DNA of 64,000 bases, taken from contig NC_068996.1 of assembly GCF_001194135.2 (NCBI RefSeq), positions 38,932,954-38,996,953 on the forward strand. Reading direction: 5' to 3'. The stretch comes from Octopus bimaculoides. Lineage: Eukaryota. The translations under genes were made by a program, and so were the position numbers. The notes beneath the pieces were generated by a model, which had not been told where the DNA came from, ran no database searches, and saw only the letters and a list, made by a program, of their open reading frames with translations. Below, one piece after another: positions 30,652 through 46,112 of the stretch (position 1 is the stretch's first letter; each line of letters opens with the position of its first letter).

Positions 30652-30797
30652 TTAACATGTGAATATGTTAGTTTTCCATCTTCTGGAGGTATGCGACTAA
30701 GTATCTGTTCTGTAACTTCAGCAAAGTTACCCGTGCACATAGCATATCGTGCAAGGACTGTACAGCCCCTGGCAATAACTGAGTAAAACAACGGCAT
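30652..30797 (-). CDS. VAMP7: VAMP7 coding exon 1 (longin N-terminus, MPLFYSVIARGCTVLARYAMCTGNFAEVTEQILSRIPPEDGKLTYSHV)
   Basis: Hand translation is colinear with human VAMP7 MAILFAVVARGTTILAKH..GNFLEVTEQILAKIP..KLTYSH. 146 nt, ends in a GTAAGT donor (phase 2). AG acceptors upstream would start the exon at 30803, 30812 or 30846. Confidence 0.96.
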
Positions 30798-31152
30798 TGT
30801 CACCTTGACAAACTAAAGCTAGCGTGTCTAATTTTAATCATAAAGTCTGAAAAAGAATTTTAAAATAATTAATTGAAAAGAGCTGTGTGCAGAAAATTGT
30901 TTATTAATGATCCTAAAAGAATAGTTAGTGTTCATAATGAAATAAATATGTCTTTTATCTCTTACTTGTGTCAGTCATTAGACTGCAGCCATGCTAGGGG
31001 CACCACCATGAAGCATTTTAATGAAGTGTATCAGCCCAAGTGCTTATTTCTTTTATTTTAAGCCTGACACTTATTCTATCAGTATCTTTTGCCAAACTGC
31101 TAAGTTACAGAGACATAAACACACCAACACCAGTTATCAAGCTAGTGGAGAA

Positions 31153-31199
<47 letters not shown>

Positions 31200-32743
31200 A
31201 TGGGTTCTTTTTGTCAGTTTCTGTCTGCTAAATCCACTCACGCACTCACATGTCTTTGGTTGGGTTGAGGCTAGAGTAGAGGACACTTGCCCAAGGCGTG
31301 ATGCAATAGGCCTGAATCTGGACCTGGAACCATATGGTTAGGAAGCAAACTTCTTAACACACAGCCACACCTATTTGCACAGAATACAGAAAATATTCAC
31401 AAAGGTAGTTATGAATGTTTGAATATGAATTATGTAAGCTCATATTTATTTCATTAAACAAATGTGTATAAATTGCAATTGGGTGAGTAAGGCAAGAGTT
31501 ACATGTAACTCTTTAGCATTCAGATTTCTCTAACAAATGTAACATTTATTCATGATAATATGAACTGGAGGGACCTGTGAATATTTCATGGAATTAACAG
31601 TAAACCTGTTGGGTTATTTCTGAAAACTTTATCCAAAAAACCTGAAAGCATAGCCTGTGTTATGTGTATATCAAAAGATAGTCGCTCATCTGCTATTCAT
31701 TAAAAAGTAAAAGAAATTGGAATACGATGATTACTTAATGTACCGTATATATACACTATATGTTTTATGCACAATTTCATAGACTTAATACACAACAATC
31801 ATAAAAAAAATATTCACTCTTATTTTTCCATTTTGCCCATGAACAAACAAAAAATATCTCGTACATATGATACAACCTTTAGTTAAATTGCATATATCTG
31901 CCTCGTAAATAAGCATGAATATTTCACAGAATTACATTTATGCACCTGCATTAGGGATAGGTGATATAAAAACTTGGTTCAATTAAAATAAAACACTTTT
32001 CACTATCCAATTACCACCACCACCATCATCATCATGTCTCTTCCGCCTCTCTCTCTCTCTTTGCATTCTTTAACCTCACCATCCCCTCTGCTAAAATTAT
32101 ATTTTTAACTCTCCTTCTCTACCTTTAACTAACTTTTTTAATCATGTAATAAATATTACAGTCCCCCTACTTCATGTCACGGACGCTTCTCCCTTCCTCT
32201 TTGTCTCACTCTTTGCCTTATCCTCTTTTTCTCTCTCCTCTCTTTCCTTTCAGCTAATCACATAAAAGTGTTACAATTACATTCCCTCTACCTCATGTCA
32301 TGGACGCTTCTCTCTCCCTCTTTTGTTTCTCTAATCATGCGAAAGCATTAATGACAGGCTAAGTAACGCAATGACAAGGAGAATTATCATATGATTAATC
32401 ATGCATTATCTTATTGCTTTGAGATTTTGATGACATCATAGTTTATTTTTAGAATAATATTGAAAGTGTGGGAAGCCAGATCTGACCAGTTTGAAGATAA
32501 TACAGGTAGATTATGTTGCCTGGATATGGCCAGTTACATAACAGAGGGTTACATAACAGAGATGACACTTATTGTATTGTATTTGGCTACACAATAGTGT
32601 ATGATACAGTGAATAGGGATGGCTATAAGAAATAGGGAACAGATTTGAAAAGAAATGAGAAATGTTCCTGAGGTTTTCAAGGCAGTGCTCCAGCATGGCT
32701 GCAGTCAAATGACTGAAACAAATAAAAGAATAAGAGTCCAGAC

Positions 32744-44255: not shown

Positions 44256-44280
44256 CAGCAATCAAAGCCCATATATATAG

Positions 44281-44320
<40 letters not shown>

Positions 44321-46060
44321 CGTGAGTTGATGGTTGGTGATTATACAAAAACACTTGATTGATGTTTCTTTCTTTAGCCATTCCAAATTTATTGCCTCTT
44401 TGTTGCATTATGTCTGATGATATAAACACAATAACTTATAATAATTCTCTCCACACTGTATCTTCTAAGATGATAACATACTAAGGTGGTAGGGTATTTG
44501 CTAAAAGAGATTTGATGCATATGACACAACTACTTATATTGGTTTCAAATTTTGGCACAAGACTAGCAATTTGGGTGAGGTGTAAGTCGATTACATCGAT
44601 CCCAGTGCACAACTGGTACTTATTTAACGAACCCCAAAAGGATGAAGGGCAAAGTCGACCTCAGTGGAATTTGAACTCAGAAAGTGACAGCAGATGGGAT
44701 ACTGCCAAGCATTTCACCCAGCATGCTAACGATTCTGCCAGTTCCCCACCTTAATAATAATAGTTTCAAATTTTGGCAGCAATTTCGGGGGAGGGGGTAA
44801 GTCGATTACATCAACCCCAGTAGTCAGCAGGTACTTATTTTATCAACCTCAAAAGGATGAAAGGTAAAGTCAACCCTTGGAAGAATTTGACTACAGAACA
44901 TAAAGACAGACAAAATGCAGCTAAGCATTTTGCCTGATGCAACATTGATTCTGCCAGCTCACTTCTTCATATATTGCCTGCAAGGATGACTAAAAGCAAC
45001 CTCTTGAGTTATTTCCTCAAACCATCATCAATTATTTTCCTCCCCAAAATTGAATAAAGTGTATTTTGATACTCAATTATGTTTCCAGCTATCACAGTTC
45101 TTTACATTAGAGAGATATGCACTGCTATATCTAACTAGATGCCCTATAAATGAAAATGTCTCTATTACTCTACACCATTTTCATCCATTAACAAATCTCA
45201 GCACCACTTGATAGGCATGCATATAATAAATGCTTTATGAACAGAAATATAAATAAACTTCAATAGTGCTATGACAACCACGTTTCACTCTTTGCAGTGC
45301 TTGGAAAGACAGCAAGCTAAGTAAAAGTTTGGTTGCACTTGCATACAGGCTCATTCCCAGCAACCCTCCCCAGCTAAGCATCCCTCGTGGGCTCATAGAT
45401 GCTGGTGCCAAGTAAAAAGCACCTGTACCGGTGTTGTATAAAAGCACCCAGTATACTCTGTAAAGTGGTTGGCATTAAGAAGGGCATCCAGTCATAGAAA
45501 CCATGCTAAAGAACACCTGGAGCCTGAACAGCTTTTTAGCTGGTCAGCTCTTGTGAAACCATCCAACCCATGTCAGCAGGGAAAATGGGTGTCAAATGAT
45601 GATGATGATGATGATCTGGAATTTCAGACACTATGTCTGTAAAGAAAAAATAAAATAAATACATAAAAGAATACCAGGTGTAGGCATGGTTGTGTGGTAA
45701 GAAGTTTGCTTTCCAACCGCATGATTCTGGGTTCTGTTCTATTGTATGACACCTTGGGCAAGTGTCATCTACTGTAGCTTCAGGTCACCAAATAAATGAG
45801 GTGGATTTGGTAGGCAGAAACTTGAAAAAAAAGCCAATGGTGTGTGTGCATGTGTCTATGTGTGAGTGTGTATCTTTGTTCTACACCACTGCTTGACAAC
45901 TAGTGTTGGTTTGTTTACATCCCTGTAACAGTGGTTCAGCAAAACGAGACTGATACAATAAATACTAGACTTTAAAAGAAACAACACTTCGAAGCAATAC
46001 CCCAGCATGGCCACAGTTCAATGACTGGACCAAGTAAAAGATGGAATAGAAAAGACTTAC

Positions 46061-46112
46061 AACTTGTTGGTATCCTCAAATCGACAACAAAACTTCATTG
46101 TGGTCCTGTAAC
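46061..46112 (-). other. Candidate 52-nt upstream exon containing ATG (MKFCCRFEDTNK..)
   Basis: gttttgcag acceptor and perfect GTAAGT donor in non-repeat sequence. The phase-2 end matches the phase of the DTYMK acceptor. Confidence 0.5.

What the first reader, a model, noticed from the sequence alone, without database searches (positions are those of the whole stretch)
30652..46112. Single-exon thymidylate kinase apparently inside the VAMP7 5' region: one locus, two unrelated proteins
Seen: an intact DTYMK CDS with no introns, on the same strand as VAMP7 and 8.4 kb upstream of its ATG. It has its own strong splice acceptor (exon start 39908) and its own AATAAA. VAMP7's ATG exon also starts at an acceptor, so both need an upstream first exon. 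The only promoter-like CpG-rich zone seen is at about 53-56 kb. Known: human DTYMK is multi-exon, so an uninterrupted CDS suggests retroposition. Inference: a DTYMK retrogene landed in VAMP7 intron 1 and acts as an alternative terminal exon. Splice and polyA choice would then switch output between a dTTP-synthesis enzyme and an endosomal/lysosomal SNARE. A weak AA|GTAATC donor 16 nt after the DTYMK stop (39213) could even allow a dicistronic mRNA.
Basis: partly seen in the sequence, partly recalled or inferred. Interest (0 to 1): 0.78.

Follow-up and report, generated by a model that had tools for sequence, protein, structure and literature searches.

The report
Old DTYMK retrogene upstream of octopus VAMP7
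An intact, intron-free copy of the thymidylate kinase gene, made by retroposition in an early octopod, lies in what was ancestrally the long first intron of the SNARE gene VAMP7; this kind of nested retrogene is well known, and whether the two genes share a first exon could not be tested here.

Summary
The window is Octopus bimaculoides chromosome CM046616.1. An uninterrupted 210-codon thymidylate kinase (DTYMK) ORF lies at 39862-39230 (-), behind a strong acceptor (exon start 39908), with AATAAA at 39172-39167. It is 8.4 kb upstream of the VAMP7 ATG exon (30846-30652, -). No assembly gap touches either exon.

Retroposition is strongly supported. The same genome has an intron-containing DTYMK on another chromosome, and so do Argonauta and Sepia. 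The intronless copy lacks all four conserved introns. It is sister to the octopod parental clade (200/200 bootstraps). It sits at the same place upstream of VAMP7 in O. vulgaris, O. sinensis and Argonauta, and is under purifying selection (dN/dS 0.16-0.24).

The "alternative terminal exon of VAMP7" idea is plausible but unproven. The annotated 227-aa isoform joins an exon ending ATGAG|GT (55750), beside the strongest CpG island, to 39908. That acceptor is conserved in Argonauta. Sepia mRNAs show VAMP7 has a non-coding exon 1 14.7 kb upstream of the same ATG-exon acceptor. No CpG island lies between DTYMK and VAMP7 exon 2. No octopus transcripts were available, so a shared exon 1 is inferred. 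The dicistronic idea has no support.

This is a new member of a known kind (Taf9/Ak6-like; it resembles VAChT/ChAT).

The parts
39150..39908 (-). DTYMK retrogene main (terminal) exon. Acceptor AG at 39910-39909, exon start 39908. CDS 39862-39230 (210 aa). AATAAA at 39172-39167. The 3' end of the exon is approximate.
   Evidence: ORF. Pfam PF02223 E=1.1e-44. Sequence read. Same 210 codons in O. vulgaris and Argonauta, dN/dS 0.16-0.24. Acceptor conserved in Argonauta.
55750..55830 (-). 3' part of the annotated DTYMK first exon. It ends ...ATGAG|GTAATA (ATG 55754-55752, last exon base 55750). Spliced to 39908 it gives M-R-N-Y-S..., the 227-aa isoform. The 5' end of the exon is unknown.
   Evidence: P0001 sequence and its 16.5-kb gene range. 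Sequence read. The 80 nt before the donor are 100% identical in O. vulgaris, which has the same 227-aa isoform.
55400..56400 (.). Strongest CpG-undepleted (promoter-like) zone of the window, just upstream of the exon-1 donor. It contains a TATTTATA motif.
   Evidence: CpG o/e 1.35-1.63 against a window median of 0.22. The strongest CpG zone is at the same place in O. vulgaris. The core is about 95% identical between species against an 89% background.
53800..54400 (.). Second CpG-undepleted zone. It could hold an alternative first exon.
   Evidence: CpG o/e 1.07-1.36. Not followed further.
30652..30846 (-). VAMP7 exon 2, the ATG exon. Acceptor AG at 30848-30847, main ATG at 30797, donor after 30652. 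It carries a 13-codon uORF at 30841-30800.
   Evidence: The acceptor position is identical in Argonauta and Sepia and is confirmed by Sepia mRNA-to-genome alignment.
10087..27629 (-). Remaining VAMP7 coding exons: 27629-27572, 24874-24825, 21535-21448, 20147-20057, 13032-12965, 11743-11651, 10152-10087.
   Evidence: tblastn with human VAMP7. The spliced 219-aa product is identical to XP_014771372.1, XP_029648767.1 and CAI9734430.1.
30847..39149 (-). Interval between the DTYMK exon and VAMP7 exon 2. It is intronic if the VAMP7 start site is upstream of DTYMK. It consists of repeats, microsatellites and four assembly gaps.
   Evidence: No CpG-rich window. Only repeats align to Argonauta. Gap contents checked against O. 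vulgaris, with the 142-N gap unresolved.
41080..42140 (-). Decaying transposon-like ORFs (229 aa and 130 aa, GC 47%, degenerate CCHC-like motif) inside the long DTYMK 5' intron. Not part of either gene.
   Evidence: No Pfam hit. Only partly retained at 64-76% identity in O. vulgaris and O. sinensis.

Best explanation
The 39.2-39.9 kb element is a functional DTYMK retrogene.

Origin. In the octopod stem lineage, after the split from squids and cuttlefish and before the Octopus/Argonauta split, a spliced DTYMK mRNA was reverse-transcribed. The copy inserted in sense orientation into the long first intron of VAMP7, 8-10 kb upstream of the VAMP7 ATG exon. The intron-containing parent persists on another chromosome.

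Expression. The retrogene has no CpG-island promoter of its own. It is reached by splicing: a distal first exon at the 56-kb CpG island (donor after 55750) joins a conserved acceptor at 39908. The transcript then ends at a poly(A) site soon after the stop codon (AATAAA 39172-39167).

Protein product. The exon-1 ATG is in frame and in weak context, and would give a 227-aa form. The internal ATG has an A at -3 and gives the conserved 210-aa enzyme, which is probably the main product.

Link to VAMP7. Most likely the distal promoter and first exon are those of VAMP7. Transcripts would then either splice into the DTYMK exon and terminate there, or skip it and splice to VAMP7 exon 2 at 30846.

Shown: the retrogene origin, its age, its coding constraint, both conserved acceptors, the annotated exon 1 to 39908 junction, and the ancestral long VAMP7 intron 1. 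Inferred: that octopus VAMP7 still starts upstream of DTYMK and uses the same first exon.

The confidence of 0.6 is for the whole statement. By part it is about 0.95 for the retrogene origin, about 0.6 for a VAMP7 start site upstream of DTYMK, and about 0.4-0.45 for the very same first exon.
For: Retrogene origin:
- The ORF is intact with a full-length PF02223 match.
- Parental genes with four introns at the same positions exist in O. bimaculoides (L018, CM046625.1), Argonauta (L003) and Sepia (L006). The first two have the same DUF2045 neighbour.
- NJ tree: retro clade, parent clade and their union each 200/200, with decapodiforms outside.

Age and constraint:
- A single-exon DTYMK coding sequence lies upstream of VAMP7 on the same strand in O. 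sinensis (8.4 kb), O. vulgaris (9.6 kb) and Argonauta (10.4 kb, same contig).
- The Sepia VAMP7 locus has no DTYMK.
- dN/dS is 0.16-0.24 with no indels.

Splicing into the DTYMK exon:
- The acceptor TTTTTTTAG|AAATT is conserved between Octopus and Argonauta, although the rest of the 5' flank is not.
- The 227-aa isoform P0001 can only arise from ATGAG|GT at 55750 joined to 39908. O. vulgaris has the same isoform, and its annotation used Iso-Seq and RNA-seq (PMC10700109).

Promoter:
- The 500 bp on each side of the DTYMK exon have CpG o/e of 0.08-0.10.
- The strongest CpG island abuts exon 1.

VAMP7 structure:
- Seven Sepia mRNA contigs place a non-coding exon 1 14.7 kb upstream of an exon-2 acceptor that aligns base-for-base with 30846.
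- No CpG island lies between 30.85 and 39.2 kb in O. bimaculoides. In gap-free O. vulgaris the interval holds only one small, non-conserved patch.
Against: - No octopus transcript was available, so no read joins exon 1 to 30846. The Octopus DTYMK and VAMP7 proteins are on record only from genome assemblies.
- Gene ranges returned by the tools cover coding sequence only, so annotated VAMP7 UTR exons could not be seen.
- The flanks of the 142-N gap (36600-36741) could not be placed in O. vulgaris, which has about 1.5 kb more sequence there. A small first exon in that stretch cannot be ruled out.
- A CpG-poor VAMP7 promoter in the 8.3-kb interval would escape the CpG test.
- Argonauta has a modest CpG patch 1.3 kb downstream of its DTYMK.
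- Sepia exon 1 and the Octopus 56-kb island share no detectable sequence, so homology of the first exons is not shown.
- Identity between O. bimaculoides and O. vulgaris is too uniform to pick out hidden exons: 7.7% of 100-bp windows reach 97% or more.
- The AATAAA is not conserved in Argonauta.
Confidence: 0.6

Rival explanations
1. Two independent tandem genes. After the insertion, or all along in octopods, VAMP7 transcription starts from a CpG-poor promoter and short first exon between 30.85 and 39.2 kb. DTYMK is then simply the upstream neighbour, with its own recruited distal exon and promoter at 56 kb. Nothing is shared.
For: - Both the O. bimaculoides and O. vulgaris records list the two as separate genes, and nothing retrieved links them.
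- Argonauta has a modest CpG patch about 9 kb upstream of its VAMP7 ATG and downstream of its DTYMK.
- The interval holds four assembly gaps in this window, and the 142-N gap could not be resolved against O. vulgaris.
- A GTAAGA donor-like site lies about 120 nt upstream of 30846.
Against: - No CpG-undepleted window lies in the interval in O. bimaculoides. The only patch in O. vulgaris is a palindromic, species-specific insert flanked by (TA)n.
- Conservation with Argonauta stops about 10 nt upstream of the exon-2 acceptor, and everything further upstream is repeats.
- In Sepia exon 1 lies 14.7 kb away, not nearby.
Confidence: 0.3
2. A nested gene with its own proximal promoter. The 210-aa isoform is transcribed from a start site just upstream of 39908 or inside the exon, as imprinted mammalian retrogenes are within host introns. 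It would affect VAMP7 only through transcriptional interference or premature polyadenylation.
For: - A second public isoform of exactly 210 aa exists (P0121). It need not use the exon ending at 55750.
- The first 210 nt of the coding sequence have CpG o/e of 1.0-1.25 in Octopus and Argonauta.
Against: - The 500 bp upstream of the exon have CpG o/e of 0.08.
- The polypyrimidine-AG acceptor directly upstream is conserved across a divergence at which the surrounding sequence no longer aligns. That implies selection for splicing from an upstream exon.
- Overall CpG o/e of the coding sequence (0.64) is like that of the VAMP7 coding sequence (0.56), so coding constraint can explain it.
Confidence: 0.15
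3. A dicistronic mRNA. The AA|GTAATC site 16 nt after the DTYMK stop (GT at 39213) splices to VAMP7 exon 2, so one mRNA carries both ORFs.
For: The motif exists, and it is present in the three closely related Octopus species.
Against: - It is not conserved in Argonauta, where the whole 3' flank differs.
- It is a weak donor immediately followed by a canonical AATAAA.
- VAMP7 would lie more than 700 nt downstream of another ORF with no sign of an internal entry mechanism.
- No annotation or transcript supports it.
Confidence: 0.03
4. A DNA-level duplicate that later lost all four introns, rather than a retrocopy.
For: No poly(A) remnant or target-site duplication is visible next to the copy.
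Against: - All four introns are missing at once, and only the coding region is homologous.
- The copy is on a different chromosome with unrelated flanks.
- At dS of about 1.2, insertion hallmarks are expected to have decayed.
Confidence: 0.03

Closest known systems
Retrocopies inserted in host-gene introns and expressed as chimeric transcripts with the host's upstream exons, for example mouse Taf9 within Ak6 (Carelli et al. 2016, PMC4772013; Fablet et al. 2009, cited there)
   Same: - An intronless coding sequence derived from a multi-exon parent.
- Sense orientation upstream of host coding exons.
- A 5' intron and distal exon that connect it to a CpG-island promoter.
- Two unrelated proteins from one stretch of DNA.
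- Carelli et al. report that most multi-exonic retrogenes gained upstream exons, and they list 13 human and 14 mouse intronic retrocopies spliced to host exons.
   Different: - This is a cephalopod case, at least as old as the Octopus/Argonauta split.
- It involves a housekeeping nucleotide kinase and a SNARE.
- Use of the host exon is not yet shown by transcripts here.
- The host contributes at most two codons (M, R), so no fusion protein results.
Cholinergic gene locus: VAChT inside the first intron of ChAT (Eiden 1998, as reviewed in PMC3053374)
   Same: - The whole ORF of one gene lies in a single exon within the first intron of another, on the same strand.
- Upstream non-coding exon(s) and alternative splicing can yield either mRNA.
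- The arrangement is conserved over long evolutionary time.
   Different: - VAChT and ChAT are functionally coupled and the arrangement is ancient across bilaterians.
- DTYMK and VAMP7 have no known functional link, and the arrangement is octopod-specific and born by retroposition.
- VAChT also has its own promoters within the intron. For DTYMK this is unknown.
Canonical eukaryotic thymidylate kinase (human DTYMK, PDB 1E2D/1E9C)
   Same: - 45% identity over the full length.
- The P-loop (EGxDxxGKSTQ), LLFSANRWE, DRYAFSG and LID (R..G.ERYE) motifs all align.
   Different: - Encoded by a single coding exon.
- An optional 17-aa N-terminal extension exists in Octopus only.

Membership tests
Thymidylate kinase (Pfam PF02223, DTYMK) | Full-length match to the family profile above the curated cutoff | tested here: met
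   PF02223, E=1.1e-44, 152.7 bits against a cutoff of 27, profile positions 1-185 of 185. PDB human thymidylate kinase, E about 5e-49.
Thymidylate kinase (Pfam PF02223, DTYMK) | P-loop GxxxxGKS/T, DR(Y/F) motif and Arg-rich LID present | tested here: met
   FEGIDKCGKSTQ, DRYAFSGVAY and CRSGAGDERYE align to the human motifs.
Thymidylate kinase (Pfam PF02223, DTYMK) | dTMP to dTDP phosphotransferase activity | not testable with these tools
   Needs an enzyme assay. Purifying selection (dN/dS 0.16-0.24) supports a retained function.
Retrogene (functional processed gene copy) | Lacks all introns that interrupt the parental coding sequence | tested here: met
   Four introns lie at matching positions in the O. 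bimaculoides, Argonauta and Sepia parental genes. In retro-protein numbering they fall after about aa 45, 82, 111 and 176. The window copy has none.
Retrogene (functional processed gene copy) | An intron-containing parent at a different locus in the same genome, with the copy nested phylogenetically beside it | tested here: met
   LOC106880029 on CM046625.1 (L018). Retro and parent clades are sisters, 200/200.
Retrogene (functional processed gene copy) | Poly(A) tract remnant and target-site duplications | tested here: inconclusive
   None is visible in the 3' flank. At dS of about 1.2 since the Octopus/Argonauta split decay is expected.
Retrogene (functional processed gene copy) | Intact ORF under purifying selection | tested here: met
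   210 codons with no indels in three species, dN/dS 0.16-0.24. The truncated O. sinensis model looks like an assembly error.
Host-gene-nested retrogene sharing the host's 5' exon (Taf9/Ak6-like; resembles VAChT/ChAT) | Lies within a host intron in sense orientation | tested here: inconclusive
   The sense orientation and the position upstream of the host's exon 2 are shown. The long ancestral intron 1 is shown in Sepia. The present-day octopus VAMP7 start site could not be located.
Host-gene-nested retrogene sharing the host's 5' exon (Taf9/Ak6-like; resembles VAChT/ChAT) | A functional splice acceptor upstream of the retro-ORF, joined to an upstream exon | tested here: met
   The acceptor at 39910-39909 is conserved in Argonauta. 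The annotated 227-aa isoforms in two species require the 55750 to 39908 junction.
Host-gene-nested retrogene sharing the host's 5' exon (Taf9/Ak6-like; resembles VAChT/ChAT) | Transcripts of both genes contain the same first exon | not testable with these tools
   The Octopus proteins are on record only from genome assemblies, so no transcript contig was available. Gene ranges cover coding sequence only.
VAMP7 / longin SNARE | N-terminal longin domain plus synaptobrevin (R-SNARE) domain and a C-terminal membrane anchor | tested here: met
   The product is listed with PF13774 and PF00957. The eight spliced exons give 219 aa, identical to the public Octopus VAMP7. The closest hits listed in other molluscs are 65-70% identical.

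The most novel reading that the evidence does not exclude
The exon ending at 55750 and its CpG-island promoter are truly shared. One primary transcript then yields either DTYMK mRNA (splice to 39908, then polyadenylation near 39150) or VAMP7 mRNA (skip to 30846). This competition between splicing and polyadenylation would have been kept since the octopod ancestor. It would be a retroposition-born invertebrate counterpart of the cholinergic locus, tying a dTTP-synthesis enzyme to an endolysosomal SNARE.
Probability: 0.4. Interest if true: 0.5.

Novelty: new member of a known kind. Interest (0 to 1): 0.3.

Why it matters
If the first exon is shared, output of an enzyme needed for DNA precursor synthesis and of a SNARE needed for late endosome and lysosome fusion would be coupled at one promoter. 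The balance between them would be set by splice and poly(A) choice. That would be a clean natural system, kept throughout octopod evolution, for studying how an intronic terminal exon competes with host splicing.

Even without sharing, the locus is a well-dated example outside mammals and flies of a retrogene that survived by acquiring a distal 5' exon. It also gives octopods two DTYMK genes where Sepia shows one. None of this overturns current understanding, because the mechanisms are the ones already described for mammalian retrogenes.

Tried and rejected
1. Direct transcript evidence. Exact-protein look-ups for the 210-aa and 227-aa DTYMK and the 219-aa VAMP7 found only genome assemblies and no octopus RNA contigs.

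2. Homology of first exons. Sepia VAMP7 exon 1 and its flanks, and the three Octopus CpG zones, were compared with Octopus, Argonauta and Sepia loci at low stringency. Only repeats and low-complexity hits came back.

3. Phylogenetic footprinting between O. bimaculoides and O. vulgaris. Background identity is 89%, and 7.7% of 100-bp windows reach 97% or more. This is too permissive to reveal a hidden VAMP7 exon 1.

4. A CpG patch in O. vulgaris and O. sinensis near the 308-N gap looked at first like a hidden promoter. It is a palindromic insert between (TA)n tracts, it is not conserved in O. bimaculoides, and it does not lie in the gap.

5. 'Octopus lost the parental DTYMK'. The first protein search suggested this. 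A search with the Argonauta parent then found LOC106880029, so the idea was rejected.

6. 'O. sinensis has pseudogenised the retrogene'. The 158-aa model comes from a 161-nt deletion plus four small indels within 100 nt, in a sequence otherwise almost identical to intact O. vulgaris. This is more likely an assembly error.

7. An Rfam scan of the window found nothing.

8. The ORFs at 41-42 kb have no Pfam match and are decaying in sister species. They are a transposon relic, not a gene.

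
Full report
**Identity of the window and check of the observation**

The 227-aa protein that contains the window's ORF is recorded on Octopus bimaculoides chromosome CM046616.1 (GCA_001194135.2).

The six-frame scan shows a 235-aa ORF at 39230..39937 on the minus strand. 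Its translation matches Pfam Thymidylate_kin over the whole model (E=1.1e-44). It aligns without interruption to human DTYMK at 45% identity and to solved thymidylate kinase structures (E about 5e-49). The P-loop, DRYAFSG and LID motifs are all aligned.

- DTYMK acceptor AG at 39910-39909, exon start 39908.
- ATG 39862, TAA 39232-39230.
- GT of the AA|GTAATC motif at 39213.
- AATAAA at 39172-39167.
- VAMP7 ATG at 30797, in an exon running from an acceptor (exon start 30846) to the donor after 30652.

The eight VAMP7 coding exons splice to a 219-aa protein identical to the public Octopus VAMP7.

**Assembly gaps**

No gap touches the DTYMK exon or VAMP7 exon 2. Four gaps lie between them.

- The 308-N gap sits inside a (CA)n/(TA)n tract. 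Its flanks are directly contiguous in the gap-free O. vulgaris orthologue.
- The 584-N gap corresponds to 334 bp in O. vulgaris.
- The flanks of the 142-N gap (36600-36741) could not be placed uniquely. O. vulgaris carries about 1.5 kb more sequence there, partly SINE-like.
- The O. vulgaris interval shows no strong, conserved CpG island.

**It is a retrogene**

A first protein search found two DTYMK proteins in Argonauta hians: one 71% identical (210 aa) and one 52% identical (238 aa). The 71% copy is a single-exon coding sequence. The 52% copy is a 9.5-kb multi-exon gene next to a DUF2045 gene.

A search with the Argonauta multi-exon protein then recovered the O. bimaculoides orthologue, LOC106880029, on another chromosome (CM046625.1). 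It is also multi-exon and also next to a DUF2045 gene. Sepia pharaonis has a 19.6-kb multi-exon DTYMK.

The four introns fall at the same protein positions in all three parental genes. All four are absent from the window copy.

In a neighbour-joining tree the retro copies (O. bimaculoides, O. vulgaris, Argonauta) and the parental copies (O. bimaculoides, Argonauta) form sister clades. The two decapodiform sequences lie outside. Each of these groupings has 200/200 bootstrap support. The duplication therefore happened in the octopod stem.

**Age, position and constraint**

The single-exon copy lies upstream of the VAMP7 ATG on the same strand in four species:
- O. bimaculoides: 8.4 kb.
- O. sinensis: 8.4 kb.
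- O. vulgaris: 9.6 kb.
- Argonauta: 10.4 kb, from the record coordinates on one contig.

The Sepia VAMP7 locus, including its whole first intron and about 9 kb upstream of exon 1, has no DTYMK-like sequence. Sepia DTYMK is on a different contig.

The copy has kept exactly 210 codons. dN/dS is 0.24 (O. bimaculoides against O. vulgaris) and 0.16 (against Argonauta), with dS of about 1.2-1.3 to Argonauta. It is an old, constrained protein-coding gene and not a processed pseudogene.

**How the retrogene is expressed**

The public 227-aa isoform (P0001) begins MRNYSS... and its coding range spans 16.5 kb. That is only possible if an exon ending ...ATGAG|GTAATA (last base 55750) is spliced to 39908: ATG AG|A AAT TAC gives M R N Y.

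O. vulgaris has the same isoform and a matching 15-kb gene range. Its annotation used Iso-Seq and RNA-seq (PMC10700109). The last 80 nt before the donor are identical between the two species.

The acceptor TTTTTTTAG|AAATT is conserved in Argonauta, although the rest of the 5' flank does not align. This argues that splicing from an upstream exon is ancestral.

In Argonauta an in-frame TAA follows the acceptor. The 17-aa extension is therefore specific to Octopus, and the conserved product is the 210-aa protein. Its ATG has A at -3, whereas the exon-1 ATG has T at -3 (read).

The 500 bp on either side of the DTYMK exon are strongly CpG-depleted (o/e 0.08-0.10). The strongest CpG-undepleted zone of the window (o/e 1.35-1.63 against a median of 0.22) lies directly upstream of the exon-1 donor. 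The same is true in O. vulgaris.

**Is it inside VAMP7 intron 1, and is the first exon shared?**

Seven Sepia mRNA contigs align to the Sepia genome with a non-coding exon 1 at L008 9121-9420 and exon 2 starting at 24143. That makes intron 1 14.7 kb. The exon-2 acceptor aligns base-for-base with Octopus 30846 and with Argonauta.

The octopus ATG exon is therefore exon 2, and a long first intron is ancestral for coleoid VAMP7.

In O. bimaculoides no CpG-rich window lies between 30.85 and 39.2 kb. The one patch in O. vulgaris and O. sinensis is a palindromic, non-conserved insert. Against Argonauta only the coding exons, plus about 60 nt upstream of the VAMP7 ATG, are conserved.

All of this fits an insertion into VAMP7 intron 1 with reuse of the VAMP7 promoter and first exon.

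Three limits apply:
- No octopus transcript could be retrieved.
- The gene tables show only coding ranges.
- Sequence comparison could neither identify nor exclude a CpG-poor VAMP7 first exon in the 8.3-kb interval.

I put the probability that the VAMP7 start site lies upstream of DTYMK at about 0.6. I put the probability that the very same first exon is used at about 0.4-0.45.

If the exon ending at 55750 were spliced to 30846, its ATG would open only a 5-codon uORF (ATG AGA CTT TAT GAT TAA). That is compatible with VAMP7 translation.

**The dicistronic idea**

The GTAATC motif after the stop codon and the AATAAA are conserved only among the three closely related Octopus species. They are not conserved in Argonauta. 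Nothing else supports a DTYMK-VAMP7 read-through splice.

**Comparison with what is known**

Retrocopies that land in host introns and are expressed with host 5' exons are well documented in mammals. So are retrogenes that gain upstream exons to reach distal CpG promoters. Carelli et al. 2016 list 13 human and 14 mouse intronic cases, including Taf9 in Ak6, and report that most new retrogene exons are upstream.

The layout also resembles the cholinergic locus, where the single-exon VAChT ORF lies in the first intron of ChAT.

The octopus locus is a new member of this known kind. It is notable for its age, its clade, and the pairing of two functionally unrelated housekeeping proteins. It is not new in mechanism.

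**Verdict**

- Observation: confirmed.
- Retroposition: strongly supported.
- Nested gene with a shared first exon: plausible but unproven.
- Dicistronic mRNA: unsupported.
- Interest: 0.3.

Noticed in passing
L004:10001-10477 (O. sinensis), equivalent to window 39862-39230: The RefSeq O. sinensis 'thymidylate kinase' (XP_029648602.1, 158 aa) lacks the LLFSANRW and DRYAFSG motifs. The cause is a 161-nt deletion plus four 1-2 nt indels clustered within about 100 nt. The rest is almost identical to intact O. vulgaris. This is probably a local assembly error, less likely a very recent pseudogene.
   Followed up: partly
window 30841-30800 (-): A 13-codon uORF in VAMP7 exon 2 starts 6 nt into the exon and ends with a TGA that leaves 2 nt before the main ATG (..AGGTGACAATG). 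Its start, its length (13-14 codons) and its stop position are conserved in Argonauta and Sepia, although the peptide is not. This may be a conserved translational control element.
   Followed up: partly
L018:14900-28286 (O. bimaculoides parental DTYMK locus): Exons 1-4 of the parental DTYMK are found, but the last exon (C-terminal about 50 aa) is not. Several long N gaps follow exon 4, for example 15312-16846. The two public models have unrelated, implausible C-termini. It is unclear whether the parent is intact in Octopus.
   Followed up: partly
window 41080-42140 (-): Two adjoining ORFs (229 and 130 aa) in a 47%-GC island, with a degenerate CCHC-like motif and a basic tail. They have no Pfam hit, are interrupted by the 10-N gap, and are only partly retained in O. 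vulgaris and O. sinensis. They look like a decaying retroelement gag/ORF1-type relic inside the DTYMK 5' intron.
   Followed up: partly
L007:75-887 and protein cluster of P0004/P0123: Sepia DTYMK transcripts encode both about 270-aa forms, with a basic N-terminal extension of about 59 aa, and about 212-aa forms. Octopus retro-DTYMK likewise has a basic, acid-free 17-aa optional extension (MRNYSSAVVHRKYNSTN). These could be targeting peptides. This is speculation only.
   Followed up: no
L008:10001 versus L008:9121-9420: The annotated S. pharaonis VAMP7 (CAE1280008.1, 241 aa) has an N-terminus from an exon at about 10001 and lacks MPLFYSVIA. Seven mRNA contigs instead use a non-coding exon at 9121-9420 and encode the 219-aa protein. 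The 241-aa model is probably wrong.
   Followed up: partly
L010:2-433: One Sepia transcript contig carries a Tc1/mariner-type transposase fragment directly upstream of VAMP7 exon 2 in place of exon 1. It is either a chimeric assembly or transcription from a transposon in intron 1.
   Followed up: no
window 12971-12965 (-): Tandem donors AAT|GTAAAT|GTAAGT at the end of VAMP7 exon 6 could give 217-aa or 219-aa proteins (minus or plus Val-Asn). The public protein uses the distal donor.
   Followed up: no
window 38140-38980 (-): Several blocks 97% or more identical between O. bimaculoides and O. vulgaris lie 250-1100 nt downstream of the DTYMK stop, beyond the first AATAAA. They could mark a longer 3' UTR or regulatory sequence, but the background rate of such blocks is high.
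   Followed up: no
window 46060-46112 (-): The upper bound of the finding (46112) coincides with an exon-like segment, ttttgcag|GTTACAGG...CAACAAG followed by ttGTAAGT. I found no evidence for or against its use.
   Followed up: no
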